This document shows positions 8,396-59,222 of a stretch of 64,000 nt of DNA, piece after piece (the stretch's first letter is position 1; every line of letters begins with the position of its first letter). The stretch covers positions 2,356,001-2,420,000 of the forward strand of contig NC_043023.1 in assembly GCF_006345805.1 (NCBI RefSeq), given 5' to 3'. The DNA is from Octopus sinensis. Lineage: Eukaryota. The position numbers were made by a program, and so were the translations under genes. The notes below the pieces were generated by a model that was not told where the DNA came from, did not search any database, and saw only the letters and a program-made list of their open reading frames with translations.

Positions 8396-8433
8396 TCTTT
8401 CTGTGGAAGAGCATAGGCTCGAAACGTAAAAGA
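8396..8433 (+). ncRNA. Minimal type I hammerhead ribozyme candidate (core variant CUGUGGA) in a PLE-type terminal repeat (~8170-8520)
   Basis: UCUUU-CUGUGGA-A-GAGC(AUAG)GCUC-GAAAC-GUA-AAAGA. Helix I has 5 bp, helix II 4 bp, and helix III is the palindrome ACGU. Confidence 0.55.
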
Positions 8434-8734
8434 TGTTTTTGAATTCCTGAGCGTTATACTAATACATCTGTTTGTTGTCTACACCACCGTCTTTGTATTT
8501 TGTTTTTTCATAAACTCTCCCTATATATATATATATATATATATATAAAAGTAGATAAATGGTACAACGAAGTACCAATATTTACTGGAAAATATCGATC
8601 GTAATAAATAAGACGCTATTGTATAGCTTCACTGCGTATGTACTAGCAAAGACGTGTGTGTGCAACAAACATGAAAAAAATTTGTCTTACCTCTAGGAAG
8701 AACATCTGAAAAATGGAAAACCTAGAATCGGATA

Positions 8735-8805
8735 ATGCAGGACCGGTTTCAGACTCTTCAAATATGTTTGACAACGTAGATTTGATTAGTCTTCATCAGC
8801 TGCAT
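8735..8805 (-). ncRNA. Type I hammerhead ribozyme, canonical core
   Basis: Minus strand AUGCAG-CUGAUGA-AGACU...AGUCU-GAAA-CCGGU-C/CUGCAU. Helix I has 6 bp, helix II 5 bp plus an inner UCAAAU/AUUUGA helix, and helix III is the palindrome ACCGGU with a GUC cleavage triplet. Confidence 0.85.
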
Positions 8806-9151
8806 ATACCTCGACAAAATTTCAAATGTTGCCACATCAATACCAGTATACTCGTCTGAACACCAAAACATTAACAGAAAGATAACAGTGAAGAAGTTTC
8901 AATGAAAATAGTAATGCAATACGAAAGTATTGCTTTCCAGTAAAGGATAGCCCGTGAGGGTAAAATTATACATATCAAAGTAAATAAATTAATATATATT
9001 TATTTATATCATAAATAATATTTAATTATATCTTATGGATATAATGAGGTGGTCTCATAAAATGCACGTCATGCTGAAACATATGTAGCAATATATTAGT
9101 AAAAGTATAAAGTCACCATTAGTGAGGTATTTCTTGCTATTAATGTATTCT

Positions 9152-9532
9152 TTTCCTCTTTTGTTCCAGTCATTTGACTGCGGCCATGCTGGAGCACTAC
9201 CTTTTTAGTTAAACAAATCAACCCTAGGACTTATTCTTTGTAAGGCTAGTATTTATTCCATTGCTGTTGTTTGCCAAACTGCTAAGTTACTGGGATGTAA
9301 ACGCACCAACATTGGTTGTCAAGTGATGATGGAGAGACAAACACACACACACACATATATATATATATACGGTAGGCTTCTTTCAGTTTCCATCTACCAA
9401 ATCCACTCACAAGTCTTTTGCCAGCCCTAGACTATAGTAAAAGTTATTTGCTGAAGATGCCACACAGTGGGACTGAACACAGAACCATGTGGTTGGGAAG
9501 CAAGCTACTTACTACACAGCCACTCCTGCACC
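9152..9532 (-). mobile_element. SINE family A
   Basis: Reverse complement of the family A head and tail. Confidence 0.8.
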
Positions 9533-9765
9533 TATATATATATAATGGGCTTCATTCAGTTTCCATCTATTAAATTCACTCAGAAGATTTTGGTGAGCTT
9601 TTGGGGTTGCAGTAGAAGATACATGCCCAAGGTCCTACACAGCGTGATTGAACCAGTGATCACATGGTTAGGAAACAATTATACACATACACAGATATAG
9701 TTGTCGATAGATAGATAAATAGATACAAATATATATATATATGTGTGTGTGTATATATATATATA

Positions 9766-9910
9766 TACATTATTTACATTTGACAGATTTTTGTCCTCAT
9801 CTTTTTTGTTGTTAACACAATGTTTCGTCTGATGTACTCACCAGCCTTCATCAGGTGTTCTGGGAGTATTTCGAACATGGGTCCTCATTCCTAAGGTATT
9901 TTTCCAATGT
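9766..9910 (-). mobile_element. Short hammerhead-carrying PLE-type repeat (decayed HHR at 9814-9859)
   Basis: Minus strand AACAC-CUGAUGA-AGGCUG...CAGAC-GAAAC-AUU-GUGUU. Paralogues lie at 10568-10715(+) and 17843-17995(+). Confidence 0.7.
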
Positions 9911-9911
9911 T

Positions 9912-10460
9912 ATTATTATTACTATTATTATCATTATTATTATTCAGTAGTTTTATTTTTATAGCGTGCTTTCACTTCACTACCAAGCGCAGCTCTGTGT
10001 GCCTTGGGTATGTGCTGTGGTTTGCTGTGATGCTCTGACGGTTACTGTATTGAAAGTTTTTTGCATAGGATGGGTGCATTGCCTAGTAGTGCAATTTTCT
10101 GTATGTTATATGTGTTTGTAAGTCCTGGTGGTTTTGTTATGCATTAATCTGAATATTTTTTATCATGCCTAATGCGCCTACTATGAAAGGAATTGTTTCT
10201 GTTTTTAGATTCCACATTCGAGTTACCTCTGTTTCCAGGTCTTTGTATTTTGAAAGTTTCTCCATTCCTTTTAGAGAAACGTTGTCATCTGTTGGTATTG
10301 ATACATCAATTAGAAAGCAACTTTTTTCTTCATGATCTCTGACAACTATATCTGGTCTGTTGGCCTTAATTTCTCTATCTGTGTGTATTGGCATATCCCA
10401 GAGTATGGTTGCTTTCTCATTTTCTGTGACCTTTTCTGGTGTGTGTGGTGTGTGCTTATT
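9912..10460 (-). mobile_element. 3' end of an R4/Dong-like non-LTR retrotransposon (restriction-like endonuclease domain and 3' UTR)
   Basis: PEKVTENEKATILWDMPIHTDREIKANRPDIVV...FLIDVSIP...EKLSKYKDLE...IPFIVGALG is a PD-(D/E)xK RLE motif, followed by an (AAT)n tail. Confidence 0.85.
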
Positions 10461-10499
10461 ATTATTATTATTATTATTATTATGGGTATTATTATTATT

Positions 10500-10572
10500 A
10501 TTCAGATCACTGCTTGGAACTGAATTCGGAATCTTGGGGTTTGTAGCCCGCACTCTTAACCACTACGCCCAG
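10500..10572 (-). mobile_element. Short tRNA-like SINE with (AAT)n tail
   Basis: Minus strand GGGCGTAGTGGTTAAGAGTGCGGGCTACAAACCCCAAGATTCCGAATTCAGTTCC...AATAATAAT, with A- and B-box-like segments. Confidence 0.55.
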
Positions 10573-10712
10573 GTTCGCAGGGCACCTGATGAAGGCTGGA
10601 GAGTACATCAGCCAAAATGTTGTGTTAACAACAAACAAGATGAGGACAAATATTCCTCAAATGTAAATAATGAAAATAATGTACATAACTCCTCGTCTCT
10701 CAAACACATATA

Positions 10713-10715: not shown

Positions 10716-10764
<49 letters not shown>

Positions 10765-10860
10765 GGTCCCGGGTTGAGTCAGGGTTAACCACAGTAAATA
10801 AGGTACTCAATACATAGCAGAGTAAATTAATTTATTCTATAGAAGGAGCTTCTACAGGAC

Positions 10861-10900
10861 TAGAACTGATGATTTCATTTGAATGAAACAGTTTTAGTCC
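10861..10900 (+). ncRNA. Hammerhead-like motif at the centre of a ~95-bp fold-back (10831-10926)
   Basis: AA-CUGAUGA-UUUCAUUUGAAU-GAAAC-A-GUU-UUAGUCC, with long flanking inverted arms. Confidence 0.5.
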
Positions 10901-10921
10901 TGTAGAAGCTTCTTCTATAAA

Positions 10922-10962
<41 letters not shown>

Positions 10963-11314: not shown

Positions 11315-11717
11315 AGGCACAGGAGTGGCTGTGTGGTAAGTAGCTTGCTAACCAACCACATGGTTCTGGGTTCAGTCCCACTGTGTGGCATCTTAGGCAA
11401 GTGTCTTCTGCTATAGCCCCGGGCCGACCAATGCCTTGTGAGTGGATTTGGTAGACAGAAACTGAAAGAAGCTTGTCATATATATGTATATATATATATG
11501 TGTGTGTTTGTGTGTCTGTGTTTGTCCCCCTAGCATTACTTGACAACCGATGCTGGTGTGTTTACATCCCCGTCACCTAGCGGTTCGGCAAAAGAGACCG
11601 ATAGAATAAGTACTGGGCTTACAAAGAATAAGTCCCGGGGTCGATTTGCTCGACTACAGGCAGTGCTCCAGCATGGCCGCAGTCAAATGACTGAAACAAG
11701 TAAAAGAGTAAAGAGTA
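11315..11717 (+). mobile_element. SINE family A, full length
   Basis: Complete head, internal microsatellite and tail. Confidence 0.9.
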
Positions 11718-11719
<2 letters not shown>

Positions 11720-11782
<63 letters not shown>

Positions 11783-14541: not shown

Positions 14542-14567
14542 TTTAAACAATGCTTGTGAGGGCGCGT

Positions 14568-14880
14568 GGCTTAGTGGTTAGAGCATTTGGCTCATGATCG
14601 GAAGGTTCTGAGTTCGATTCCCAGTGACGTGTTGTGTCCTTGAGCAAGACAATTTATTTCACGTTGCTCGAGTCCACTCAGCTGGCAAAAAGGAGTTGTA
14701 CCTGTATTTCAAAAAAGGGCCAGCCTCGTCACACTCTGTGTCACGCTGAATCTCCTTACAAACTACATTAAGGGTACACGTGTCTGTTGAATGCTCAGCC
14801 ACTTGCACATTAATTTCACAAGCAAGCTGTTCCGTTGATTGTATCAGCCGGGACCCTCATCATTGTAACCGATGGGGTGC
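14568..14880 (+). mobile_element. tRNA-derived SINE, family D
   Basis: GGCGCGTGGCTTAGTGGTTAGAGC...GAGTTCGATTCC A/B boxes. A related copy lies at 26282-26658(-). Confidence 0.8.
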
Positions 14881-15200: not shown

Positions 15201-15224
15201 CTAAGTGGACGATTCTATTTAGTC

Positions 15225-15627
15225 TTTTACTCTTTTACTTGTTTCAGTCATTTGACTGTGGCCATGCTGGAGCACCGCCTTTAGTCGAGCAGATCAACCC
15301 CAGGACTTATTCTTTGTAAGCCTAGTACTTATTCTATCGGTCTCTTTTGCCGAACCGCTAGGTGACGGGGATGTAAACACACCAGCATCGGTTGTCAGGC
15401 GATGCTAGGGGGACAAACACAGACACACAAACATATACACACACATACATATATACATATATACGACGGGCTTCTTTCAGTTTCCGTCTACCAAATCCAC
15501 TCACAAGGCTTTGGTCGGCCCGGGGCTATAGCAGAAGACACTTGCCCAAGGTGCCATGCAGTGGGACTGAACCCGGAACCATGTGGTTGGTAAGCAAGCT
15601 ACTTACCACACAGCCACTCCTACGCCT
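15225..15627 (-). mobile_element. SINE family A, full length
   Basis: Reverse complement of the consensus seen at 11315. Confidence 0.9.
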
Positions 15628-17722: not shown

Positions 17723-17842
17723 TAATAATAATAATGATAATAATAATAATAATAATAATAGTAATAATATAATAATAATAATAATGATAATAATAATAAT
17801 AATAATAATAGTAATAATATAATAATAATAATAATAATAATA

Positions 17843-17995
17843 ACATCGAAAAATATCTTAGGAATGAGAACCCAGGTTCAAAATTTCCCCAAGACACCTG
17901 ATGAAGGCTGGAGGGTATAAACGTTGTGTTAACAACAAACAACATGAGGACAAATATCTGCCAAATGTAGATAATTCCTCATCTCTTAAATATAT
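17843..17995 (+). mobile_element. Third copy of the short HHR-carrying repeat, with the helix II 3' strand deleted
   Basis: GACACCTGATGAAGGCTGGAGGGTAT[deletion]AAACGTTGTGTT, directly after a ~300-bp (AAT)n tract. Confidence 0.7.
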
Positions 17996-19295: not shown

Positions 19296-19333
19296 CTGTT
19301 ACTCTGAGTTTCCCGTTGCCGTTCATCGGACAG
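19296..19333 (-). ncRNA. Minimal type I hammerhead candidate, U4C core variant
   Basis: Minus strand CUGU-CCGAUGA-ACG(GCAA)CGG-GAAA-CUC-A-GAGU-A/ACAG, within a PLE-type end repeated at 27822, 45546 and 58870. Confidence 0.65.
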
Positions 19334-19721: not shown

Positions 19722-19752
<31 letters not shown>

Positions 19753-19813
19753 CTGTAATATGACATGTGACAATTATTCAGTTGCCATAATAAATGCATT
19801 TTTTTATTGTCTC

Positions 19814-19874
19814 AAAAGCTGAGGAGATGCCAAAGCAGATTTCCGCCATGGCATCTGAAACTCGGAGTTTTATT
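19814..19874 (+). ncRNA. Type I hammerhead candidate inside a fold-back (19752-19911)
   Basis: AAAAG-CUGAGGA-GAUGCC...GGCAUC-U-GAAA-CUC-G-GAGU-U/UUAUU. Confidence 0.55.
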
Positions 19875-20242
19875 ATGGCAACTGAATAATTGTCACATAT
19901 TATATTACAGATAAATTCCTCTGTCTACATAATATTGAGGTCTCATTCATTGTTTTGTTGTCTTAGCATTACTATTAATATATATATGTATAGAAGGAGA
20001 CGGTGACCCCCTTCAGTCAGGAATGACCATGGGATTGCACCTAGAAAGTTACATATCGTCAGCCACTAAGGGACATGCTCAACTGGTTAAGGTCAAATAA
20101 CTGACAAGCAAATCTGTGGTATTGAGCAGAATATTTGCTGTAGCCCATCTTTTATACCAAGACAAAACAATGTACATGATAACATTTCCAATCAGTTAAG
20201 ATCAGAAATCATGAGAGCCACTGCCTGGTACTACATCAGAAC

Positions 20243-21895: not shown

Positions 21896-22702
21896 GAGGA
21901 CAACCTGTACTGTTAAGCAAGTTCTTTTTCCCCTTTTTTCTCCCCCCCCCGCCCCCGCCACTTCTGGTTCACGACATTATTAAGCATTCGACAGTAATCA
22001 AAGAAGGGCAAACCCATTATTGAGTGCATCGGACAGTGCACAGAAAATTGGATTTTGTTAGCGATGTGCAAGGTGCTTTTGCTGTTGTTGTTCTTGTTTG
22101 TGATGTTGAACCCCAGGTCAGGACTGACCCAGGGCTAAAACTCATCAAATCCGCTCCAGTGCTCCAGCTGCGAAAATACATCATGTGTGTGTGTGTGTGC
22201 GTGTGTGTGTGCATATCTTGTATCTTTTAGCTGTTTCAGTCCTTAGACTGTGGCCATACTGGAGCACCACCTTGAAGTATTTTGTTTCAGTCGAATGAAT
22301 TGACCTCCCAATACCTATTTTTTTTCTTTTGTTAAACCTGGTACATATTCTGTCAGTCTCGTTTGCTGAGCTGCTAAGTTACAGGGATGTAAACAAGCCA
22401 ACACTCTGGTTGTCAAGTGGTGGTGGGGGACACACAGACACAAACACACACACACACACAAATATATATTCTTTTATTCTCTTACTTGTTTCAGTCATTT
22501 GACTGTGGCCATGTTGGAGCACCACCTTTACTTGACCAATTCGACTCCAGGACTTATTCTTTGTAAGCCTAGTAGTTATCCCATCGCTCTCTTTTGCCAA
22601 ACTGCTAAGTTACGGGGACAGAACCACACCGACATCAGTTGTCAAGCGACGATGGGGAGACAAACACAGATACACAAATATAAACATATATACAACGGGC
22701 TT

Positions 22703-23160: not shown

Positions 23161-23804
23161 TGCTTTCTTTCAGTTTCTGTCCACTAGATCCACTCACAAG
23201 GTTTTAGTTAGCCTGAGGCTATAGTAGAAGACTCTTGCCCAAGGTGCCACACAGTGGGACTGAACCTGGAACCATGAGGCTGGTAAGCAAGCTTCTTACC
23301 ACACAGCCATGTATGTATCCAGCAAAGTAGCTATTTCTAAAATCTTCATAAGAGATGCAAGTAGTAAATCTACCAAAAATTAATGGCTGTGACCACCTCA
23401 ACATGGTTGTTCCGTACACAACATTGTTACTACTCATTTTAACCCCAGGAGGACATCTCCTCCTGCTGGTTAACGACACTCTATCTGTGTCTGTTATATT
23501 GCAAAGAAGGGATTAAGTGACTCCCATCAAGCACTGAAAGGAGCCAATAGATAAGCTGGTTTCTGGGTATAAACCTTCTTTGGAACTCTATCTCCTATAG
23601 AGATTTTAGCACTAGCTACTTTACTTGATGTAAGATCAGCTGTTGTGTGTTGCTTATTTATTTATGTATTGCAAACTAGGAGGAACAACTGCCATGTCTA
23701 GCAGACTGGTGTAACCATTGCCAATGATGGGTTATACACAGAAACCAGCTGGTCTATTGTTCCTCTCAGTGCCAGATGGGAGTTGTTAACTCCCTTGTTT
23801 GCAA

Positions 23805-24375
23805 TATATGGGATGAGGTGGTGAAGCATGACCTTCGAACTTTAGGTCTCACCGAGGAAATGTCTAGAGACCGAGACCTTTGGAAGTATGCTGTGCGTGG
23901 GAAGACCAGGCAGGACACATGAGACCATATTCCATGGCCTCTACCTGGGGTATAGCCAGTCCACTTATGCATACCTTTCCTTCTGGGGACACAAAACTCT
24001 ACTTGTGAAGACCTGTTGAGGCAAGTGAAAATCGAAATCAATCAATATAATGGAAATTGTAGCTGTGATACCAGTGCCAGTGGCACATAAGAGAACCATC
24101 CAAACGTGGCCGTTGCCAGCGCCACCCTGACTGGCCTCTGTGCCAGTGGCACGTAAAAAACACCATCCAATCGTGGCCATTTGCCAGCCTTGTCTGGCAC
24201 ATAAAAAGCACCCACTACACTCACGGAGTGGTTGGCGTTAAGAAGGGCATCCAGCTGTAGAAACACTGCCAGATCAGACTGGGCCTGGTGCAGCCTTCTG
24301 GCTTCCCAGACCCCAGTTGAACCGTCCAACCCATGCTAGCATGGAAAGTGGACGTTAAACGATGATGATGATGAT
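23805..24375 (+). mobile_element. RTE LINE 3' end (ORF C-terminus and 3' UTR, equal to family C)
   Basis: WDEVVKHDLRTLGLTEEMSRDRDLWKYAVRGKTR, followed by the family C tail ending (GAT)n. Confidence 0.75.
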
Positions 24376-26789: not shown

Positions 26790-27183
26790 CTCTTGACTCT
26801 TTACTCTTTTACTTGTTTCAGTCATTTGACTGCGGCCATGCTGGAGCACCGCCTTTAGTCGAGCAAATCGACCCCAGGACTTATTCTTTGCAAGCCCAGT
26901 ACTTATTCTATCGGTCTCTTTTGCCGAACTGCTAAGTGACAGGGATGTAAACACACCAGCATCGGTTGTCAAGCAATGCTAGGGGGACAAACACAGACAC
27001 ACAAACATATACACACACATACATATATATATACGACAGGCTTCTATCAGTTTCCGTCTACCAAATCCACTCACAAGGCATTGGTCGGCCCGAGGCTATA
27101 GTAGAAGATGCCACGCAGTGGGACTGAACCCGGAACCACGTGGTTCGTAAGCAAGCTACTTACCACACAGCCACTCCTGCGCC
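26790..27183 (-). mobile_element. SINE family A, near full length
   Basis: Reverse complement of the consensus. Confidence 0.85.
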
Positions 27184-27821: not shown

Positions 27822-27990
27822 ATATGCTTTATTTAAAGCAGCAGAAAATTCAACAAAACCTGTTACTCAGGCAACGGGAAACTCAGAGTAACAGGTTTTG
27901 TTGAATTTTCTGCTGCTTTTAAATAAAGCATATTACTCTACCACTGGTATTTGAGTACTCTTTTTTCCACCTTGTTTCACATTTATGTGT
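27822..27990 (+). mobile_element. PLE-type end with a 47-bp-arm fold-back and the 3' half of a hammerhead in the loop
   Basis: ATATGCTTTATTTAAAGCAGC...CCTGTTACTC-aggcaacgggaaactca-GAGTAACAGG...AAAGCATAT. Confidence 0.75.
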
Positions 27991-31699: not shown

Positions 31700-32350
31700 T
31701 TTGCATATTGCTTTTGTAGCCATCACATAGCATGTACGTCTGTCTCTCTCTGTTTTTCCTTCTCCTGACAAAATGGCAAGCCGTGATTAATATGTTAAAG
31801 TTAAAATCAGACGAAGCGTTTTAAAGAACAAGAACAAGAAGATGAGCGAAGAGAAATTCATAGAAATTACTTTAAACAAAGGGTTAATAATTTTTCATCT
31901 TTTCTGTGACCTTAATTCGTATTTTTCCCTCCCTAATTTACAACAAAAAACACTAGAAAAATCACCAACAAAACATCGTTCGAAATAGTAAAAACCTTTA
32001 GGCCCCTGTAGTTCTAGAAAAAAGCAAATATCTAAGAAAAAAATCAAAGAAAAAGCTCAAATAAAACATGCAGGAATATTTATGGTCCCTGTTCTAGAGA
32101 TTTCGTTCAATTTAATGGATGAAAGATCTTGCTAAAATAATGCCACGGACGACATTTTAAAATGTACTTGTTGCATAAATCTTCGACAAACGGCAGACAT
32201 TTTCATTCTATGCTTTGATTTTTTTTGCTATTTCTACGATGAGTTTCCTTATACGTTTTTGGACGTCTTTATTCGTTTATTATATTTTATTTCGTTTTAT
32301 TTTATTGTAGTTTATTATCTTTCTTTATTTTTTTACTTCTGGGAGTAATT
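31700..32350. promoter_or_regulatory. Possible promoter or 5' UTR (unique sequence retaining CpG)
   Basis: No microsatellite or SINE, many CpGs, and a YY1-like AAAATGGC at ~31771. No supported ORF. Confidence 0.25.
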
Positions 32351-32412
32351 TTGATTTAGCAATGGAATTTTGATGCTTGTCTCTTCTTAGAATGCTTAGA
32401 ACGAATTCACCA

Positions 32413-32450
<38 letters not shown>

Positions 32451-32502
32451 GTACATACAAATATATATATATATATTATATATATATATATATTATGTGT
32501 GT

Positions 32503-32534
<32 letters not shown>

Positions 32535-32863
32535 CACATACAGAGAGAGAGGAGAGATTTATGTATGTATATATGTAGATTTTTATGTGTTTTTCGTTCT
32601 GTTTTCGTTTTAAACTTTCGGAATTAGGTATACCATTAGTTTAATCCAATTTCTGATCTTCTGGAAGGTTCTCTCATAAAACTTCCATGTTTTTATAATA
32701 TCTTGGCACTCTCTCTCTCTCTCCCACCTCTCTTTCTCTCTACTTATATTCTATCTATCTCTCCCTCTCTCTCTCTCTCTGTCCATAGATCGTTTGGCCA
32801 TTCTTTTTGTGAGATAATAATCTATATCTTTCTCTAGCACTCATTTCTTTGCTCTTTGACTGT

Positions 32864-32898
<35 letters not shown>

Positions 32899-35595: not shown

Positions 35596-35628
<33 letters not shown>

Positions 35629-36369
35629 ATTTATCTGTCTATCCATCCATCTCTCTATCCTTTTATCTTTCCATCTATCAATCAATCAATCAATCAATCT
35701 TCCTTTCTTTCGTTCAGTCAGTGTAATAGTCTTACCCGCTCCCCACAAAATTGCAGGAGTTATACTCAGAGTAGGAAGAATTATTATTATTATTATCATT
35801 ATTTCAATTTCACTTTTCCAAGTTCTTGATTTTACTTGCTCTGGCTAATTCCGTAAAAGCAGCCGACAACCTGTTCTCAAGGGCCTCACAGAGTCTTCTT
35901 CCATGGTACCTGACACCCAAGATCCTAGCTGTCCCCAATAAAAGTTTTCTTATTTCTTTACTACCCACAAGGGGATAAACACAGAGAGGACAAACAAGGA
36001 CAGACAAATGGATTAAGTCAATTTTTTCTCTACATTGTATACTTTATAGACAATAGTCTTTTCTTTAATTTAATTTTTTATTATCCATCTGGACTATTCC
36101 ATTTCTGCACGCTAATTTTATTTTTAATTTATTCCCATTCATGTGAAACCCCTTATTCAAGTTCAAGTCATTGATGCAATTTTATACCAATTGCTATTTT
36201 TACTTTTGTTATGTTACAATTATATTATATTTTAGTTTGATTTTAATTATTACTTATTACATATCATTCAATTGTTATTATTATTTTTATTGTTAAAGTG
36301 AAAGTATATGACATAAAATAGAGAAATATTTTTGTTTCACTTTTAACACATAATACTGAAATAGTGGAG

Positions 36370-37591: not shown

Positions 37592-38796
37592 TGTATGTAT
37601 GTATGTATGTACACACACACGCACACGTACAATGATAAAAGTCCTGATAACATTAATTTTCCAACTTACCATTCCTGCAATGGCGCTACCATATTTTGAT
37701 GATACGGTCTGCAGTAATTTTACTATCTCTGGAATTAAAACAATCTGCCATTCCAGGTTCCAGTTTGATGTCTAATCTTTGGCAATCGGACAACATATAA
37801 ATGGAATTCTAGTTGTATTCATTAATTCTTCTTTTTTCTGTATTATTTAGCTGCAGTCTGTGGCCATGCTGGAGCACCAAGTTTATGGGTAAGTATTCCC
37901 TTTTTATATTTGCGTTTCAGGTTTATATTGAAAGTGTTTTATGTTTTATCAGTATCTTTTATTGGACTGCGACCATGCTGGAGCCCTGCCTGTATGATTC
38001 TATATTGGCACTAGTATATACTTTTGATGTACGAGCTGCATTTTATTGGTATCTGGCAAATTCCTTGCTACACAACTTTCGAACTTTTAGCCTTCATTCT
38101 TGCTCTGGAATGAATACCCATCAATATACAGATCAATATATATCGAATACATACCTCTTACTCATCATGCTCCAGCATGGCCACAGTCAAATGACTGAAA
38201 TGAGTAAAAGGATAATGCCAAACCCATATTTCTCTGATGGTAGAATGCCTAACTAACAGAGTCTTTGCTCAATATTATAAGCCAATGCCTGGGATACCCC
38301 AGAAACAGCTGTAGAGGCTACTTTTTACTATTTTTTTACCATATATATCCAGTACATACTGTTTACCTACTCTTTTACTCTTTTACTTGTTTCAGTCATT
38401 TGACTGCGGCCATGCTGGAGCACCGCCTTTAATCAAGCAACTCAACCCCGGGACTTATTCTTTTGTAAGCCCAGTACTTATTCTATCGGTCTCTTTTGCC
38501 GAACCGCTAAGTAACGGGGACATAAACACCCAGCATCGGTTGTCAAGCAATGCTAGAGAGACAAACACACACAGACAAACATATACACACACAAACATAT
38601 ACATATATATACATATATATATTCCCTCAATATAAAGCACTGTGTAACAATTCTTTCCCTCTTCTCACCATGCTGTGCCACCTAACTATTCTTCTTTCTA
38701 ATCATGGATTTGCCTAAACAAGACCCAATCCAGCTGGATTTAATTAGATCCTGCCACCCTCCTGCACATAATGAACACAACAAATATCATTGATGA

Positions 38797-44784: not shown

Positions 44785-45152
44785 TACTAAGCAATAAGGG
44801 TTTAGCAACGAGTTGCCTTACCACATACCGAATTTAGAAATAGCAGTCAAAGGGTTATAGCTATTTCTTTACTAAAAAGGGAGATCTCAGTAAAAACAGC
44901 ATTTGGAAGGCAGACACAAACAGGTACGAGAGAATGAATTGACTGCAATCTATCATACATTTTTTAGTTTACTAAAAAAATGTATGATAGATTGCAGTCA
45001 ATTCATTCTCTCTTACCTGTTTGTGTCTGCCTTCCAATGCTGTTTTACTGAGATCTCCTTTTTAGTAGAAGAAATAGCTATAACCCTTTGACTGCTATTT
45101 CTAAATTCGGTATGTGGTAAGGCAACTCGTTGCTAAACCCTTATGCTTAGTA
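44785..45152. repeat. 368-bp near-perfect palindrome
   Basis: The arms mirror around TTTTTTAGT-tt-ACTAAAAAA at 44969-44970. Confidence 0.9.
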
Positions 45153-49056: not shown

Positions 49057-49428
49057 TTTTACTCTTTTACTCTTTTACTTGTTTCAGTCATTTGACTGCG
49101 GCCATGCTGGAGCACCGCCTTTAGTCAAGGACTTATTCTTTGTAAGCCTAGTACTTATTCTATTGGTTCTTTTGCCAAACTGCTAAGTTACAAGGATGCA
49201 AACACACCAGCATCGGTTGTCAAGCGATGTTGGGGGGACATACACAGACACACAAACACATACATATATACGATGGGCTTCTTTCAGTTTCCATCTACCA
49301 AATTCACTCACAAGGCTTTGGTCGGCCCGAGGCTATAGTAGAAGATACTTGTCCAAAGTGCCATGCAGTGGGACTGAACCTAGAACCATGTGGTTGGTAA
49401 GCAAGCTACTTACCACACAGTCACTCCT
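49057..49428 (-). mobile_element. SINE family A
   Basis: Reverse complement of the consensus. Confidence 0.85.
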
Positions 49429-51479: not shown

Positions 51480-53073
51480 GTTATTTTGACTCCAACCCAC
51501 CCACTCACCCTCCTTTTAAACCTTTGTTGCTGCTATTGTCTTCACTTATTTGTTGCTGATGTATTGTTATACACATTTTGTTGTGTTGTTAAAGTATCTG
51601 TACTTTTGGTGTTGTTGTTACTATTCTTGTTGCCATGATGACTGTTGTCTATGCTTATTTGTTGCTTGTGTATTAATATACATATTTTGTTGTTGTTCAT
51701 GTATTAATGTTTCACTACTTTTGTTATCACTGTTGTTGTTCCTCCTTCAATTCTTCTTCTTCATCTTATTCTTCTTTCAGTTTGTCTTCATCCTTTCCTT
51801 CATCTTCTTCTTCCTCTCCTTCTCCTTCATCTTCTTCTCCTTCCTCTCCTTCTCCTCTTCCTTCTACTTCTTCTTCTTCTTCTTCCTCTCCTTCTTCTTC
51901 TTCTGCCTCTCCTTCTTCTTCCTCTCTTTCTTCTTCCTCTCCCTTTCCTCTTCCTTCTACTTCTTCTTCCTCTCCTTCTTATCCTTCTCCTCCTCCTCCT
52001 CCTTCCTCTTCTCCACCTTCTCCTCCTCCTCCTCCTCCTTCTTCTCCTCCTCCTTCTTCTCACTCCTCCTTCTTCTCCTTCTTCTTCTTCTTCTTCTCCT
52101 CCTCCTCCTTCTTCTCCTCTTCTCTTCCTCCTTCTTCTTCTCCTCCTCCTTCTTCTTCTCCTTCTTCTTCTTCTTCTCCTCCTCCTTCTTCTTCTCTCCT
52201 TCCTCTTCTTCTCTCGCTTCTTCTCCTTCTTCTTCTTCTTCTTCTTCTTCTTCTTCTTCTTCTTCTTCTTCTTCTCACTGTTGTTCTGTTTACTTATTTG
52301 CTGCTTATGTATTATTATCCATATTTTGTGGTGTTGTTGATGTTTCTCTAGCTTCGCTGCTGTTGCCATTGTTGCTTATTGTTGTTGTTTTTAAATATGC
52401 TGCTTATCTGCTGACGTAACATACGTTGTTCCTGTTCCTGTATGTGTCCCTGTTTTATTTGTTTTATTTATTTTGGTCTGTCTGTTGCTGCTGCCTCTGC
52501 AGTGGGTGTTGCTTTGTTGCTTCTGCAGCTGTTTCTGATGATGGTGTTTATGTGTTAAATATGATGCATATGTACATGCATACACATACACACACACATG
52601 CATTTAAACCTGTATATGTGTGTGCAATATATATGTGAGTGCATATATATATATTTCTACATATATATGTGCATGTGTATATATATATATACATATACAT
52701 TTGAAAACATATCTACATATCTATAGGTGTGTATATGTGTGTGTGTTTGTATATACATGTGGAAATATATGTATATGCATAAATGCACATATACGCACAC
52801 ACACATATATACACACACACATACACATACACACACACATATATATACACTCAGACACATATACACACACATACATATATATACACAGACACACACAATT
52901 ATATATATATACACACAGACACACATACACACACACATATATACACAGACACACATGCATATATGATATATATATATATATATACAACATACATATATAT
53001 ATGTGTGTGTATATGTATATGTGTATAAATATATATATATATAATGTATATATAATATATATTACATATGCAT

Positions 53074-53111
<38 letters not shown>

Positions 53112-53130
53112 CATATGCATATGCATATAC

Positions 53131-53176
<46 letters not shown>

Positions 53177-53288
53177 ATATGTGTGGTCTATATAATATAT
53201 TTGTTACTTCTGTATTTGTATTTACTCCTGCTGGTGTTGATTTACTTTTACTCCTATGTAATATTCTGATTTAATCCTTTTATTATTA

Positions 53289-53347
<59 letters not shown>

Positions 53348-53426
53348 TTCTTGTGTGTTTTAAAGTTGTTGTTGTTGTCGTCAGCATCGTTGTTCTGATG
53401 GCCGTCATCACCGTCGTTTTTGTCCA

Positions 53427-53458
<32 letters not shown>

Positions 53459-53788
53459 TCACAATTTAATTTAGAATATTGACTCAATTTTCGAAAAATA
53501 AATCTCAGCAAGTGATACAGAACCATGACACATTAAAACAATGGAACCACACACACACACACACACACACACATATGTACAAGTATACACACACACAGAG
53601 AGGTTCACAAATACACACACACACACAAATATACACACACACAGAGAGGTTCACAAATACACACACATAAACACACACACACACACAAATACACACACAT
53701 AAATACACACACACACAAATACACACACACACACACAGAGGTTCACAAATACATACACATAAATACACACACACAGGTTCACAAATAC

Positions 53789-53819
<31 letters not shown>

Positions 53820-54838
53820 CACAAATACACACACAGATTAATACACACACACACACACACACATACATACAGACTCATATATACACATACAGATACTCAT
53901 ACATAAACACATATACACTTGCAGTCACACATCTACATACACAGACATGCACAAAGCAACATATGCACATATACACACATATACACCCACATACATGCAC
54001 ACACGTATATGGATACATATACGACACATGCAGACATACACACATTCAGACACACATGCATGTACTTATGTATAGGCACGTACTTATACATATACACACA
54101 CTTACACAAACACACACATATGAACACATACACAGTTGCACACCCATATGCATAGATGTACACACAGTGACTGACACCCACATACATACACACGTAAACT
54201 TATATATTACACACACACACATGCACACACAGATGCATGTCTATATACACCCTCATATACACACAGATGCATGCCATATATACACACATGCATAGGCACA
54301 TTCCATATATACTCTCATATACACACAGACACACATCCATATAAACACACATATATGCACTCATACCCACACATATGCACTTTTGCATGCACACACACGT
54401 TTGTCCATATATACACACACATGTACAACCACACACACAGTTGTATATCTATATATATATTCATATACACGCACACACGCTATTCCATATATACACCCAT
54501 ATACATACATATTTAGACCCATATCTATATATAGACACATATACACACATACACCGATGCATATCCATATATACACATACATGCATACACACACACATGC
54601 ATATGCAGACTGCATACATACATATACACAGATATATATGCAGAAATATATAGCTCCATACACAAATGTGTATCCTTGTATATATACACTCATATACACA
54701 TACATACATACTCGTACACACATATTCACAGACAGACAGACACACACACACATGCAATCACATGGCCACACACACACATTGACACACACTCATACACTAG
54801 CACACATCACACACAATCACACAGCTTCACACGCACAC

Positions 54839-54878
<40 letters not shown>

Positions 54879-55330
54879 AACATGTATGCACACACACACA
54901 CGCACGCAATCACATGGCCTCACATTCACACTGACACACACTCATACACTAACACACACATACACACACATACCCTAACATATATGCACACACACACAGG
55001 CACACACACACAGGCACACACACACACGCAATCACATGGCCTCACATTCACACTGACACACGCTTATACATTAACACACACACATATACACACATGCCCT
55101 AACATGTATGCACACACACACATGCACACACACACACACGCAATGACATGGCCTCACATTCACACTGACACACACTTATACATTAACACACACATGCCCT
55201 AACATGTATGCACACACACACACATGCATTCACATAGCCTCATATTCACACTGATGCACTCATACACTAACACACACATATACACACACACCCAATCACA
55301 TGGCCTCACTTTCACACTAACACTCACATT
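51480..55330. repeat. (GTT)n, (CTT/CCT)n, (TA)n, (TTA)n and (CA)n blocks, with CA-derived minisatellites at 53520-53850 and 54750-55330
   Basis: Direct inspection. Units AGAGGTTCACAAATACAC and AATCACATGGCCTCACATTCACACTGAC. Confidence 0.9.
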
Positions 55331-56444
55331 CACATGGTCGTCGTCCACCCCTGTCACACACAGACGGATGGAAAACAGTAGTTGCTGGTACAACAGGGTA
55401 ATCGCCGAATGGAGTGTGATTTGTTTCAATTAAACCCAGTCACAAATCGTCGAAACAACTCATGGAAATATTTTTTATATTTTACCTTTTGCTGGTTTCA
55501 CTCATTGGACAGCAGCCATGCTGGGGAACCACCTTGAAGGGCTTTCGAATTGAACAAATTGACTCCTGATACTTATTTTTTTCCTCTTTAACTTTGGTGT
55601 ATATTCTATAGGTTTGTTTTACTGAATTACTGGCTGGGTTATGGGGATGTAAACAAACCAACATAGGCTATCAAGCAGTTTAGGGGAACTGACACAAAAT
55701 CATGCACAAACATATTTTTAATCTTTTACTTGCTTCAGTCATTGGACTGTGGCCCGGCTGGAGCAGCACTTTGAATTATTTATTGCCATGGTAGTAGTAA
55801 GATTCATAGAAGTTTTGTGGGAATATTGAATTCACAAGCAGTCCCTGACATCCTGCATGCATATCCCGAGTGATGGGATGCCCTGTTTGCCGCGGAGTCT
55901 CCACAGACGCAGGAGCAGAATGACCTCGAAGCCGCTGGTTGCCAATCAGATGCCTCTTGGAATTTTCACCAGAGCCCCGTTGTCCAGGCTGCGACCCTAA
56001 TACCGCTTGGTGCCTGATGAATTCACCTTCGGTGGCCCTGCCAGGAACTGAAGTTCCCGATGGCATAGCGCTGACACTGCCCGTTTACACCACCCTACAC
56101 TTTGAGGAGGGGTTGGACTTTAGGGGTTGCCGTTAGGAACAGAGAAGAAGCCGGCTCAACCCACCCTGGGTGGATGCTGTCATAAATAAGTACCTTGAAT
56201 GGTTGTTTTTAGTGAAACAAATCGACACCCATGCTATTTTTGTTCCTTAAGCCTCTCTTTTGCCAAACTGCTAAGTTACAGGGACAAAAACAAACCAACA
56301 TTGATTGTCAAGTGGTGGCAGGAGACTAACATAAAGACACACACGCACACACACATACAGTATCTTTCATTCTTCTACTTGTTTAAGCCAATGCTGGAGC
56401 ATCACCTTTCTGTTGATGAAATCAACCGAAGGACTTATTACTCT

Positions 56445-57058
56445 CTCTTTTCTCTTTTACTTGTTTCAGTCATTTGACTGTGGCCATGCTGGAGCACCGC
56501 CTTTAGTCAAACAAATCAACCCCAGAACTTATTCTTTGTAAGCCTAGTACTTATTCTATCGGTTTCTTTTGTCGAACCGCTAAGTTACCTATTTCTTTAT
56601 TACCCAAAAGGGGCTAAACACAGAGGGGACAATCAAAGACAGACATAGGTATGAAGTCGATTACATCAACCCCAGTGCGTAACTGGTACTTAATTTATCG
56701 ACCCCGAAATGATGAAAGGCAAAGTCAACCTCAGCGGAATTTGAACTCACAACGTAACGCAGACGAAATACCGCTAAGCATTTCGTCCGGCGTGCTAACA
56801 TTTCTGCCAGCCTGCCGCCTTAAACACACCAGCATCGGTTGTCAGGCGATGTTGTGTGGACAAACACATACACACCTACATATATATACATATATACAAT
56901 GGGCTTCTTTCAGTTTCCATCTACCAAATCCACTCAGAAGGCTTTGGTCAGCCCGAAGCTATAGTAGAAGACACTTGCCGAGGTGCTATGCAGTGGGACT
57001 GAACCCAGAACCGTGTGGTTGGTAAGCAAGCTACTTACCACACAGCCACTCCTGCGCC
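56445..57058 (-). mobile_element. SINE family A with nested SINE family B (56587-56822)
   Basis: Family A breaks at CTAAGTTAC and resumes at ACACACCAGCATCGG. Confidence 0.85.
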
Positions 57059-57814
57059 TATATATATATATACATATATATACATACAGGGTAGTCCTTA
57101 AGTTTTTAACACTACACCTAAACAAGATGGTGGCTCTGAAAATACATTAACTAGAAAATTATTTTTTTTTGTTTTTCTAAATCATTTTCCATCACAACAG
57201 ATTATAAATCACATTAAAAAAAATGACAAAAAGTTGTCTTCATTAAAAAAAAATTATTTCAAGTGATATTAATTTTGTTATGAAAGCAATAATAATAATA
57301 ATTAATAATTAATTTTTCATTATAATTATAACCATTTTTTAATTTTATTTTATTTTGCTTGAATTTGATTTGTAAGATTTTTTATTTCAAACTGTGTGTG
57401 TTGCAGCCAATTATGTTATATTTCGGGAAAATCATACTGTTAAAAACAGATTCTCTGCTTGTGGTTTATGTGGCATTTTGGTAAAATATTCAAAAATATT
57501 TCCTCACAAAATTCTGTGATCCTACAACATGGCCAGGATGTTTCATCAAAGCTTGTATCCTCTAAGCTACCTCAGGGCTGGAAACTTCAAGTTCTGTTTG
57601 TTTGAGAGCTGAATATACAAACATACTTTTGTACATATGTATAGGTGCAGTATGAAGCTTGCTTCCCATCAACATGATTTTGGGTTCAGTCCCACTGCGT
57701 AGCACCTTGATCAGGTATCTTCTACTATAATCTCACACTGATGAAAGCCTTGTGAGTGGATTTGGTAGACGGAAACTGAAAGAAGCCTGTTGTGTATATA
57801 TATATTTCATGTGC

Positions 57815-58550
57815 ATGTTGCTAAATTGGCAATGAAATGTAGGCGGCTGACCAGATGGATTCTTTGAACCTTTAGAACAAGAGACCAGGAAACCATGATG
57901 GTCCTCTGGAGGACACTTGTCCTAAGCCACTTTGACTATTGCTCTCAGCTATGGTCACCATCCAGTTTCAAGTTAATCACAGAACTTGAGGCGATCCAAC
58001 GAAGCTACATGAAGATAGCCTCTGTGCAGCATATAAACTACTGGGAAAGACTCAAGAGATTAAGACTCTATTCCTTAGAGTGTAGGCGAGAAAGATCTGC
58101 CATAATATACATCTGGAAGATCCTGGAGGGACTTGTCCCAAACTTTGGCATCGAGAGTTACACAAATGCTAGAACTGGGTGCCACTGCATAGTGCCAAGG
58201 ACTCCAGGTGTGCCATCAAGATGTAGGACAAGATACTGTGATAGCCTGGGCTTCAGAGGCCCACAGCTCTTTAATATCCTCCCGAAGGACCTGAGAGACC
58301 TGCATGGGGTGGATGCAGATGTCTTTAAAATAAAACTGGATCTCTTCTTGTCAGGTGTTCCAGATGAACCAACTTCACAGCAGGAGGTGCAGATGAGGGC
58401 AGCTGCATTCGAACTCTCTCATGCACCAATGGCAATTGCTAAAAGCATTCGTGAATAAAATCATGTAGCAACACAAATGGTGTGCCCCAACATGCCCCAC
58501 CAGCTCGTGAGCTGAAACTAGATAAAATAAATAAAATAAAATAAAAATAT
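57815..58550 (+). mobile_element. CR1/L2-like LINE 3' end (RT C-terminus, 3' UTR and AAAT-rich tail)
   Basis: LWRTLVLSHFDYCSQLWSP...LEAIQRS...YWERLKRLRLYSLECRRER...IYIWKILEGLVP...GPQLFNILP...FKIKLDLFL. Confidence 0.9.
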
Positions 58551-58838
58551 TCCTGTCCATATCAGCTAACTCTGACGAGCGTAAGGTTATATAATCGGAT
58601 TGTTACCAAACTTTCCATTGTATCCCATGTCTGAAACCAATTGATAAAATCAGCTATCATCATCATTGTTTAACGTCCGTTTTCCATGCTGGCATGGGGA
58701 AAAAAGGAGACTGCACCAGATTTCAGTCTCATCTGGCAGTGTTTCTACAGCTGGATGCCCTTCCTAATGTCAACCACTCTGCGAGTGTAGATGGAAATTG
58801 AAAGAAACCTGTTGTATATTTATATATATATATATGTA

Positions 58839-58878
<40 letters not shown>

Positions 58879-58980
58879 TTATCGCCATACTAATATGGCA
58901 TTCTTATAAAAATAAGATAAAGCTGTCCGCTTATTAGCTCCATGAGGCCATCGCCTTAAGTTAGCTATTCGATACACAAA

Positions 58981-59028
58981 CTGTATCCATATAACCGACG
59001 AATGGCAACGTGAAACTCAGAGTAACAG
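58981..59028 (+). ncRNA. Hammerhead candidate (U4C), same family as 19296, with helix I interrupted by 10 nt
   Basis: CUGU-[auccauauaa]-CCGACGA-AUG(GCAA)CGU-GAAA-CUC-A-GAGU-A/ACAG. Confidence 0.5.
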
Positions 59029-59187
59029 GTTTTGTTGAATTTTCTGCTGCCTTAAATAAAGTATACACATATATATATATATATATATATAGATTAATTT
59101 TAATCCAAACGGGAAACAAAAAAACAACAACAATGGAACAATTACACCTATTATTATAATAGGCGCTCAGGAAAAGGAAGCAGGGAG

Positions 59188-59222
59188 GTATGACGTTTCG
59201 AGCGGAGCTCTTCGTCGGAAAC
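59188..59222 (-). ncRNA. Minimal type I hammerhead candidate (U4C) in a PLE-type end
   Basis: Minus strand GUUU-CCGACGA-A-GAGC(UCC)GCUC-GAAAC-GUC/AUAC. Confidence 0.55.

What the first reader, a model, noticed from the sequence alone, without database searches (positions are those of the whole stretch)
8396..59222. Window-wide system of hammerhead ribozymes, each family with its own palindromic helix III (possible dimerisation code)
Seen: about 15 complete or decayed motifs, plus halves, with type I topology [helix I]-CUGANGA-[helix II]-GAAA-[helix III]-UH-[helix I]. In the intact copies helix III is self-complementary and family-specific: ACGU (8424, 59193-, 17921), ACCGGU (8742-), AC-A-GU (10888), ACCG-U-CGGU (11070-), ACUC-A-GAGU (19301-, 27881, 59015), ACUC-G-GAGU (19860), ACCAGCUGGU (23744), ACAGCUGU (29958-, 38305, 39277, 39786), ACCAAUUGGU (48475) and ACAUAUGU (9079). 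Established: Penelope-like elements and non-LTR retrozymes carry minimal type I hammerheads, and loop-less palindromic helix III hammerheads (newt satellite 2) cleave as double hammerheads. Inference: many co-resident PLE/retrozyme families have diversified the palindrome, so efficient cleavage needs two RNAs or tandem units of the same family. That would be an orthogonal self-recognition code. I do not know whether this is described in cephalopods.
Basis: partly seen in the sequence, partly recalled or inferred. Interest (0 to 1): 0.88.

Follow-up and report, generated by a model that had tools for sequence, protein, structure and literature searches.

The report
Fossil hammerhead ribozymes from Penelope-like retroelements

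Summary
Six loci in three families are hammerheads or clear relics. One is an intact canonical type I motif at 8735-8805(-). It aligns end to end with Rfam Hammerhead_HH9 and its helix III is ACCGGU. Family A has two copies (8396-8433+, 59192-59218-) and family E has three (9814-9859-, 10581-10626+, 17893-17930+). Both match the published Penelope-like-element min-HHR: an extra A after A9, a G10.1-C11.1 pair, and ACGU with no loop 3. Each copy carries one or two inactivating changes, mostly CpG transitions. Four further sites (19819-19869+ and three foldback copies) are plausible relics. Nine of the 17 listed sites fail every test: 9079, 10888, 11070-, 23744, 29958-, 38305, 39277, 39786 and 48475. 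They have no core, and where paralogues exist the palindrome or core is not conserved. A palindromic helix III and cleavage as dimers are already published hallmarks of these ribozymes. The new part, one palindrome per family acting as an orthogonal code, is not supported. Unrelated families A and E share ACGU. The long "code words" come from non-hammerhead repeats. Helix I already differs between families. The motifs are best read as inert 3'-end fragments of PLE-type retroelements. Interest is low.

The parts
8735..8805 (-). Intact canonical type I hammerhead: AUGCAG-CUGAUGA-AGACU[32-nt loop containing a 6-bp sub-hairpin]AGUCU-GAAA-CCGG-U-C(17)-CUGCAU. Helix III is one A-U pair around a palindromic CCGG, or a 6-bp ACCGGU duplex in a dimer.
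   Evidence: It is the only strict-descriptor hit (reversed null 0). It aligns over the full Rfam Hammerhead_HH9 model at 8718-8818: 29.8 bits, E = 2.8e-5. The fold has z = -2.4 and recovers helices I and II. No second copy or half copy exists in the window.
8396..8433 (+). Family A min-HHR relic: UCUUU-CUGuGGA-a-GAGC-AUAG-GCUC-GAAA-CG-U-A-AAAGA. It has one core change (A6->U).
   Evidence: It is the only hit of the min-HHR descriptor at <=1 mismatch; shuffle mean 0.02. It has the bulged A after A9, the G10.1-C11.1 pair and ACGU, as defined in PMC4209133.
59192..59218 (-). Family A min-HHR relic, second copy: CcGACGA-a-GAGC-UCC-GCUC-GAAA-CG-U-C. It has one core change (U4->C) and helix I has decayed.
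   Evidence: It is homologous to the 8374-8546 element (local alignment score 128, null maximum 76). The helix II stems are identical and the loop differs. The core change is at a different position from copy 1, so the ancestor probably had an intact core.
8374..8546 (+). Family A element body: a 3'-terminal fragment of about 170 nt that carries the motif and ends in (TA)n at 8522-8547. Its counterpart is 59080-59248(-), which ends in (TA)n at 59070-59091.
   Evidence: Pairwise alignment and (TA)n coordinates.
9814..9859 (-). Family E min-HHR relic: AACAC-CUGAUGA-a-GGCUG-GUGAGUACAU-CAGaC-GAAA-CaU-U-GUGUU. The core is intact. There is one helix II mismatch, and ACGU has decayed to ACAU.
   Evidence: Decay-tolerant descriptor hit with 0 core changes. 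Family alignment A4.
10581..10626 (+). Family E min-HHR relic: GGCAC-CUGAUGA-a-GGCUG-GAGAGUACAU-CAGCC-aAAA-uG-U-U-GUGUU. Helix II is a perfect 5 bp. G12->A and C15.2->U are both CpG transitions.
17893..17930 (+). Family E relic with an 8-nt deletion that removes the 3' strand of helix II and G12. It keeps CUGAUGA-A-GGCUGG and AAACGUUGUGUU, so ACGU is intact.
   Evidence: Alignments A4 and A8. BLAST links 17793-17975 to 9769-9962(-).
19819..19869 (+). Possible hammerhead relic or variant ('F'): CUGAGGA-GAUGCCA...UGGCAUC-u-GAAA-CUCGGAG-U-U. It lies in the loop of a foldback with 48-nt arms (19747-19794 / 19869-19916).
   Evidence: Intact core with a 7-bp helix II: 1 real hit, 0 reversed, shuffles 0.03-0.11. 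There is an extra U before G12 and only 2 bp of helix I next to the core. No Rfam hit.
19296..19333 (-). Foldback family B copy, a possible truncated relative of F: CUGU-CcGAUGA-ACGGCAACGG-GAAA-CUCAGAG-U-A-ACAG.
   Evidence: Alignment A3. GAAACUCNGAGU occurs 4 times against 0.01 in shuffles. The core has C at position 4 in both copies that keep it, and helix II is poor.
58995..59024 (+). Foldback family B copy: CcGACGA-AUG-GCAA-CGU-GAAA-CUCAGAG-U-A. No helix I.
   Evidence: No Rfam hammerhead hit at E <= 10.
27870..27890 (+). Foldback family B copy that keeps only the 3' half (GGCAACGG-GAAA-CUCAGAG-U-A), between the two ~45-nt inverted arms.

Best explanation
The window is a repeat-dense, (TA)n-rich stretch of an animal genome. 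The species is not identified. A LINE fragment in the window has its closest named relatives in marine invertebrates.

Scattered through it are short, 5'-truncated 3'-end fragments of retroelements of the Penelope-like-element (PLE) / non-LTR retrozyme kind. Each fragment carries a type I hammerhead about 60-190 nt upstream of its 3' end.

In the living elements, two copies of such a ribozyme lie in one tandem transcript. They pair through their loop-less, self-complementary helix III to form a double hammerhead, which cuts the transcript to unit length. This is the published model and was not tested here.

In this window one motif is intact (8735-8805-) but has no partner copy. Families A and E have each been disabled by one or two point changes or a deletion, largely CpG transitions at C11.1-G12 and in ACGU. 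I infer that all of them are genomic fossils and not a working system.

The palindromic helix III is the known generic hallmark of these ribozymes. It is not a family-specific code.
For: Shown here:
- One strict hit that is also an end-to-end Rfam HH9 match.
- Three decay-tolerant min-HHR hits against 0 in the reversed sequence and 0.27 in shuffles, all with the diagnostic extra A after A9, the G10.1-C11.1 pair, and ACGU or its CpG-decayed forms ACAU/AUGU.
- The two family A copies are homologous, with core mutations at different positions.
- The three family E copies differ from an intact inferred ancestor by CpG-type transitions and one deletion.
- In families A and E the motif lies 60-100 nt from a 3' end that abuts (TA)n.
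- 8401(+) and 8741(-) converge on one (TA)n tract about 320 nt apart on opposite strands.

From the literature:
- The min-HHR definition, the many families per genome, the mostly solo truncated copies and the opposite-strand pairs 100-700 bp apart are in PMC4209133.
- The HHR near the PLE 3' end, (TA)n targets and inverted truncated copies are in PMC8557442.
- Dispersed solo retrozyme monomers derived from PLEs are described in bioRxiv 10.64898/2026.07.22.740005.
Against: - No reverse-transcriptase or GIY-YIG remnant was found: neither in 150 ORFs across the window nor in six-frame translations of 7.4-11.4 kb. The link to PLEs therefore rests on motif architecture and insertion geometry only.
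- (TA)n tracts occur about every 490 nt, so lying next to one is weak evidence.
- The ancestral reconstructions rest on two or three copies per family.
- The HH9 match is below Rfam's gathering score.
- No cleavage or expression data exist.
- The source organism is unknown.
Confidence: 0.8

Rival explanations
1. Many co-resident PLE/retrozyme families have each evolved a different helix III palindrome, so that a double hammerhead forms only between units of the same family. This would be an orthogonal self-recognition code.
For: The supported or plausible families show three different helix III sequences: ACCGGU, ACGU and ACUCRGAGU. Different palindromes do self-pair better than they cross-pair (for example -9.7 self against -0.9 cross).
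Against: - Unrelated families A and E both use ACGU, and their segments cross-pair as well as they self-pair.
- Family B and locus 19860 have different flanks but share ACUCRGAGU.
- All the long palindromes that made the 'code' look rich come from sequences without a hammerhead core.
- A loop-less min-HHR has only four possible palindromes (A-NN-U).
- Any two different palindromes cross-pair poorly, so that property needs no selection.
- The published model pairs tandem copies within one transcript, which already fixes the partner.
- In a double hammerhead, helix I also forms between units (my inference from the topology), and it already differs between families.
Confidence: 0.05
2. The intact motif at 8735-8805(-) is a domesticated, functional ribozyme like the conserved intronic HH9, and not a retroelement fossil.
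For: It aligns end to end with the HH9 model, including the helix I sequence and the internal loop. All core positions are intact, whereas every other motif in the window is mutated.
Against: - It scores 29.8 bits against a gathering score of 52.
- It has a 31-nt insertion in loop 2 and no loop 3, so it cannot form helix III alone.
- It lies in AT-rich, repeat-dense sequence next to another hammerhead relic and a (TA)n tract, which is the published geometry of truncated PLE insertions.
- No conservation data or gene context are available.
Confidence: 0.07
3. All the motifs are chance matches in an AT-rich, repeat-rich sequence.
For: Nine of the 17 listed sites are at background level. I adapted the descriptors after seeing the data.
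Against: - Strict hit: shuffle mean 0.03, reversed null 0, independent Rfam E = 2.8e-5.
- Min-HHR hits: 3 against 0 and 0.27.
- Two independent families reconstruct to full min-HHRs with features the descriptor did not require, namely G10.1-C11.1 and a bulged A in every copy.
Confidence: 0.03

Closest known systems
Minimal hammerheads (min-HHR) of metazoan Penelope-like elements (Cervera & de la Pena 2014, PMC4209133; Lunse, Weinberg & Breaker 2017)
   Same: Families A and E have the CUGANGA core, one unpaired nucleotide between A9 and 10.1, a G10.1-C11.1 pair, GAAA, a palindromic 15.2-16.2 (CG) with no loop 3, and a short helix I of 4-5 bp. They occur as dispersed solo copies and as an opposite-strand pair a few hundred bp apart. 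The motif lies near a 3' end that abuts (TA)n.
   Different: Helix II is 4-5 bp here, against the 6-8 bp typical in the paper. Every copy has at least one inactivating change. No PLE coding sequence or pLTR duplication was found in the window.
Canonical metazoan type I hammerheads with a very weak helix III: newt satellite 2 and axolotl HHR_Amex1 (Forster 1988; Cervera & de la Pena 2020, PMC7229834), and Rfam Hammerhead_HH9 (RF02275)
   Same: 8735-8805(-) has a 6-bp helix I (UGCAG/CUGCA, as in HH9), an internal loop and closing stem beyond helix I, an intact core, and a helix III of one A-U pair capped by a palindromic tetranucleotide (CCGG). That implies action as a dimer.
   Different: It has a 31-nt insertion in loop 2 that forms its own hairpin, and an A10.1-U11.1 pair in place of G-C. 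It is not in a tandem repeat of 170-400 bp and is below Rfam's gathering score. There is no evidence of the conservation that defines HH9.
Non-LTR retrozymes, including solo monomers (PMC7229834; bioRxiv 10.64898/2026.07.22.740005)
   Same: Short non-coding, low-GC elements that carry a type I hammerhead. Dispersed solo copies are reported as common, and a derivation from PLEs has been proposed.
   Different: No tandem unit and no second cleavage site were found in the window. Circular RNA was not assessed.

Membership tests
Hammerhead ribozyme, type I (Rfam clan CL00010) | Conserved core C3-U4-G5-A6-N7-G8-A9 ... G12-A13-A14, an A15.1-U16.1 pair and H17 (not G) | tested here: met
   All positions are intact in 8735-8805(-). 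Among the listed sites this holds only for that locus. The family E copy 9814-9859(-) also keeps all core positions, but its helices II and III are damaged.
Hammerhead ribozyme, type I (Rfam clan CL00010) | Three helices around the core, with helix I open | tested here: met
   For 8735-8805(-), helix I is 6 bp and helix II is 5 bp plus a 6-bp extension. Helix III is only one pair as a monomer, or 6 bp as a dimer.
Hammerhead ribozyme, type I (Rfam clan CL00010) | Score at or above the Rfam gathering threshold | tested here: not met
   29.8 bits against 52 for HH9. No hammerhead hit at gathering thresholds anywhere in the window.
Hammerhead ribozyme, type I (Rfam clan CL00010) | Site-specific self-cleavage after H17 | not testable with these tools
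   This needs in vitro transcription or mapping of RNA ends.
PLE min-HHR (Cervera & de la Pena 2014) | [quoted passage not shown] | tested here: met
   An A is present in all five copies of families A and E.
PLE min-HHR (Cervera & de la Pena 2014) | A G10.1-C11.1 pair closing helix II | tested here: met
   GAGC/GCUC in family A and GGCUG/CAGCC in family E.
PLE min-HHR (Cervera & de la Pena 2014) | No loop 3, with palindromic 15.2-16.2 | tested here: met
   ACGU in both family A copies and in E 17893-17930. The other family E copies have ACAU and AUGU, which are CpG-decay derivatives.
PLE min-HHR (Cervera & de la Pena 2014) | Intact catalytic core in the copy itself | tested here: not met
   A: A6->U and U4->C. 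E: G12->A in one copy, a deletion in another, and helix II/III mismatches in the third. The copies are relics, and an intact core is inferred only for the ancestors.
PLE min-HHR (Cervera & de la Pena 2014) | Location in the pseudo-LTR of an element that encodes a telomerase-like RT and a GIY-YIG endonuclease | tested here: not met
   No RT or GIY-YIG domain in 150 ORFs or in six frames of 7.4-11.4 kb. The paper itself says most genomic min-HHRs are solo motifs from truncated elements.
Non-LTR retrozyme | Tandem repeats of about 170-400 bp, each with a type I hammerhead | tested here: not met
   No second copy or half copy of the 8735-8805 motif exists in the window. The family copies are dispersed, not tandem.
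Non-LTR retrozyme | Expression as linear and circular RNAs of unit length | not testable with these tools
   No transcriptome data.
Double (dimeric) hammerhead (Forster et al. 1988) | A helix III too weak to fold alone but self-complementary, so that two units form an extended helix III | tested here: met
   ACCGGU (self-duplex -9.7 kcal/mol) and ACGU are perfect palindromes with no loop. An unconstrained cofold did not return the double-hammerhead fold as the minimum-energy structure.
Double (dimeric) hammerhead (Forster et al. 1988) | A partner copy available in the same transcript | tested here: not met
   There is no same-strand partner near the intact motif. The family A copies are 50.8 kb apart on opposite strands. 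Family E's same-strand pair is 7.3 kb apart and both copies are mutated.

The most novel reading that the evidence does not exclude
Co-resident PLE/retrozyme lineages are under selection to diversify the surfaces that pair between units in the double hammerhead: the helix III palindrome together with helix I. Ribozyme processing then works only between units of the same lineage. This would be an RNA-level self/non-self discrimination among competing retroelements. The window neither shows this nor strictly excludes it, because it offers only three or four families.
Probability: 0.05. Interest if true: 0.6.

Novelty: new member of a known kind. Interest (0 to 1): 0.2.

Why it matters
It matters little beyond annotation. 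The window adds a few previously uncatalogued copies and families of a well-described class, the hammerheads of Penelope-like elements and retrozymes.

Two practical points follow:
- Rfam's hammerhead models do not detect the min-HHR architecture. Even the family E copy with an intact core gave no hit. Annotation pipelines will therefore miss most of these motifs.
- The motif carries CpG at C11.1-G12 and in ACGU. In a genome that loses CpG by deamination it decays quickly and predictably, which may help in dating and reconstructing such families.

The attractive idea of a dimerisation code should not be pursued on the strength of this window.

Tried and rejected
- **Rfam whole-window permissive scan.** It was swamped by microsatellite-driven miRNA look-alikes and was not informative.
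- **Rfam sub-window scans.** They found no hammerhead hit for 59015, 59193-, family E, 10888, 11070 or 19860. The miss on family E shows that Rfam cannot see min-HHRs, so I did not count those negatives against families A and E.
- **First descriptor.** It required helix II to abut A9 and so missed the published bulged architecture. I corrected this after reading PMC4209133.
- **First shuffle run.** It timed out and I re-coded it.
- **Pfam call with DNA references containing stop codons.** I redid it with stops masked as X.
- **Source organism.** The homology search on the ORF at 10140-10562(-) and one contig look-up returned marine-invertebrate LINE tails and an unnamed ENA contig.
- **Lunse et al. 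2017 (PMC5785218).** The paper is not held, so I cite it only through reviews.
- **Ungapped search linking 19860 to family B.** It failed because of a 1-nt indel. Only GAAACUCNGAGU is shared.
- **Variant core UUGANAA.** No hits.
- **Proximity to (TA)n as evidence for PLE origin.** I downgraded it after finding 131 such tracts in 64 kb.
- **Unconstrained RNAcofold of the intact motif.** It did not recover the double-hammerhead fold, so thermodynamics neither supports nor excludes dimer activity.

Full report
**1. What was claimed.**

**2. Is the pattern there?** Every quoted string is present at its coordinate. Presence of GAAAC followed by a palindrome is a weak criterion in this window. GAAA followed by a perfect A...T palindrome occurs 79 times against about 42 in dinucleotide shuffles, and most cases are (TA)n tracts. 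For non-AT palindromes of 8 nt, ten ends are preceded by GAA against 2.3 expected. These collapse to about six independent events once repeat copies and the two arms of larger palindromes are counted once. The window has 131 pure (TA)n tracts of at least 12 nt and is packed with interspersed repeats.

**3. Objective scans.**
- Rfam at gathering thresholds reports only a tRNA-like element.
- A strict type I descriptor gives exactly one hit, at 8741-8799(-). The descriptor requires CUGANGA, helix II of at least 3 bp, GAAA, an A...U helix III, H17 not G, and helix I of at least 4 bp. Shuffles give a mean of 0.03 and the reversed sequence gives none.
- The same locus, 8718-8818(-), aligns over the full Rfam Hammerhead_HH9 model at 29.8 bits with E = 2.8e-5 for a 901-nt search. 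It shares the helix I sequence UGCAG/CUGCA, the internal loop and closing stem, the core, and GAAACC...GGUC. It loses score for a 31-nt insertion in loop 2 and for having no loop 3.
- The RNA folds with z = -2.4 and recovers helices I and II, plus a 6-bp hairpin inside loop 2.
- No second copy or half copy exists in the window.

This is a real, intact hammerhead motif. Its helix III is a single A-U pair around the palindrome CCGG, the weak helix III type described for newt and axolotl ribozymes (PMC7229834).

**4. The min-HHR architecture.** Reading Cervera & de la Pena 2014 (PMC4209133) showed that my first descriptor excluded the published PLE hammerhead. That motif has an unpaired nucleotide between A9 and 10.1, a conserved G10.1-C11.1 pair, no loop 3, and palindromic 15.2-16.2.

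A descriptor built to that definition finds 8401-8428(+) with one core change; shuffles give a mean of 0.02. A version that also tolerates CpG-type decay, at no more than one core change, finds three loci: 8401-8428(+), 9819-9854(-) and 10586-10621(+). The reversed sequence, which keeps repeats and hairpins, gives none, and shuffles average 0.27. The published variant core UUGANAA gives nothing.

**5. Family A.** The stretches 8374-8546(+) and 59080-59248(-) are homologous (local alignment score 128, null maximum 76). Both read ...GA-A-GAGC-loop-GCUC-GAAA-CG-U-H. The stems are identical and the loops differ. One copy has A6->U and the other has U4->C, so the ancestor probably had an intact core. 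In both copies the motif lies about 95-100 nt upstream of a (TA)n tract.

**6. Family E.** Three copies (9814-9859-, 10581-10626+, 17893-17930+) all keep ACAC-CUGAUGA-A-GGCUG. Their 3' halves differ as follows:
- One copy has a G·A mismatch in helix II and ACAU.
- One copy has a perfect GGCUG/CAGCC helix II, but G12->A and C15.2->U, both CpG transitions.
- One copy has an 8-nt deletion but keeps AAACGU.

The inferred ancestor is ACAC-CUGAUGA-A-GGCUG-(10 nt)-CAGCC-GAAA-CG-U-U-GUGU, which is a textbook min-HHR. The motif lies 60-90 nt from a shared 3' end that abuts (TA)n.

**7. Plausible but unproven sites.** 19819-19869(+) has an intact CUGAGGA, a 7-bp helix II, GAAA and ACUCGGAGU. Under a descriptor relaxed for exactly these features it gives 1 real hit, 0 reversed and 0.03-0.11 in shuffles. 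However, it has an extra U before G12 and only 2 bp of helix I next to the core. It sits in the loop of a foldback with 48-nt arms.

Family B (19296-19333-, 27870-27890+, 58995-59024+) is also a foldback. Both copies that keep the core region read CCGAYGA, and helix II is poor. Family B and 19860 share GAAACUCNGAGU, which occurs four times against 0.01 in shuffles, while their flanks are unrelated. They may be 5'-truncated or variant relatives. Rfam gives no hit for any of them.

**8. Rejected sites.**
- Family C (38305, 39277, 39786, 29958-) is a repeat of at least 280 nt. Its best-conserved copies have CCAAUGC or CCAGUAG where the core should be. Homology of the 39786 copy begins only at the stem-loop.
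- 48475 has no core, and its paralogue reads ACCAAUUGAU.
- The paralogue of 23744 reads ACCAGCUUAU and CCAAAGA.
- 10888 lies at the centre of a 98-nt foldback. I compared the two arms by eye from the sequence: CTGATGA arises from a 4-nt insertion in one arm relative to the other, and no helix II can form.
- 9079 is at background level.
- 11070(-) has no core within reach.

**9. What the elements are.** No reverse-transcriptase or GIY-YIG remnant is detectable in 150 ORFs across the window or in six-frame translations of 7.4-11.4 kb. The one retroelement ORF near the cluster, 10140-10562(-), is the tail of a widespread marine-invertebrate non-LTR element and not of a PLE. So membership in PLEs rests on three things:
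- the ribozyme architecture;
- the position of the motif near a 3' end;
- the convergent opposite-strand pair 8401(+)/8741(-), about 320 nt apart around one (TA)n tract.

This geometry is described for truncated PLEs (PMC4209133) and fits the HHR-near-3'-end, (TA)n-target and inverted-truncated-copy features reported by Craig et al. 2021 (PMC8557442). A 2026 preprint argues that animal retrozymes are non-autonomous PLE derivatives and that solo monomers are dispersed. I found no paper in the searchable library that is dedicated to cephalopod hammerheads.

**10. How it most likely works.** According to the published model, tandem copies in one transcript form a double hammerhead with an extended helix III and cut the RNA to unit length (Forster 1988, as summarised in PMC6155905; PMC4209133; PMC6765202). 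None of this is shown for these loci. Here the intact copy has no partner and all other copies are mutated, so I infer they are fossils.

**11. The dimerisation code.** A palindromic helix III and dimer cleavage are published hallmarks. Only the claim of family-specific orthogonality would be new, and the evidence goes against it:
- Families A and E are unrelated in helix I (UCUUU/AAAGA against ACAC/GUGU), in helix II and in flanks, yet both use ACGU. Their helix III segments cross-pair as well as they self-pair (-3.4 to -4.7 against -3.1 to -5.7 kcal/mol).
- Family B and 19860 share ACUCRGAGU.
- All the long palindromes come from non-hammerhead sequences.
- A loop-less min-HHR allows only four palindromes.
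- Poorer cross-pairing between different palindromes is automatic and needs no selection.
- From the topology of a type I double hammerhead, helix I must form between the 5' strand of one unit and the 3' strand of the other. This is my inference. Helix I already differs between families, so it would impose any partner specificity without help from helix III.

**12. Verdict.** Four sites are plausible and nine are rejected. The identification as PLE/retrozyme-type hammerheads is supported, and the code hypothesis is not. These are new members of a well-known kind, and interest is low.

Noticed in passing
window 14565-14626 (+); also about 10545-10575: A tRNA-like element (Rfam tRNA, 33.2 bits, missing the acceptor ends), probably the head of a tRNA-derived SINE. 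A similar tRNA-like piece, in reverse orientation, abuts the family E copy at 10581.
   Followed up: no
window, e.g. 38368-38605, 26796-27031, 15220-15453, 11483-11717(-), 49060-49264, 22467-22686, 62598-62817(-): An interspersed repeat of about 230 nt with at least 12 copies at 78-92% identity. It is the most abundant repeat in the window and has no hammerhead motif.
   Followed up: partly
window 10140-10562 (-): A 141-aa ORF that is the C-terminal tail of a very widespread marine-invertebrate non-LTR retrotransposon ORF. Named hits come from sea anemones, corals and a sea cucumber and are labelled reverse transcriptase. No Pfam model covers it.
   Followed up: partly
window 44918-45022 (both strands): A near-perfect long hairpin that scores about 60 bits to the plant MIR1513 model on both strands. 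It is an inverted repeat, flanked symmetrically by GAA-ATAGCTAT at 44857(-) and 45074(+).
   Followed up: no
window 10830-10927, 19747-19916, 27822-27933, 23495-23808: Several head-to-head foldbacks (inverted pairs of short truncated copies), some abutting (TA)n. This is the arrangement reported for PLE insertions, but it is also compatible with MITE-like elements.
   Followed up: partly
whole window: There are 131 pure (TA)n tracts of at least 12 nt in 64 kb, about one every 490 nt. They generate hundreds of spurious sub-threshold miRNA-family hits in Rfam (mir-297, mir-3149, mir-1277 and others).
   Followed up: partly
window 4001-8000, 32001-36000, 52001-56000: Blocks of strong strand-composition bias: GC skew +0.25, -0.29 and -0.39. 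They are probably long microsatellite or low-complexity arrays.
   Followed up: no
window 9814-9859(-), 10581-10626(+), 8396-8433(+): The min-HHR carries CpG at C11.1-G12 and in ACGU. The changes seen between family E copies are mostly CpG transitions at exactly these positions, so the motif decays by itself in a genome that loses CpG.
   Followed up: partly
window 19552 (+): A third, partial copy of the family A element (TTTCCTGAGCG...AATAATA...TTTGTTCCA). It appears to lack the roughly 30-nt segment that holds the hammerhead in the other two copies.
   Followed up: no
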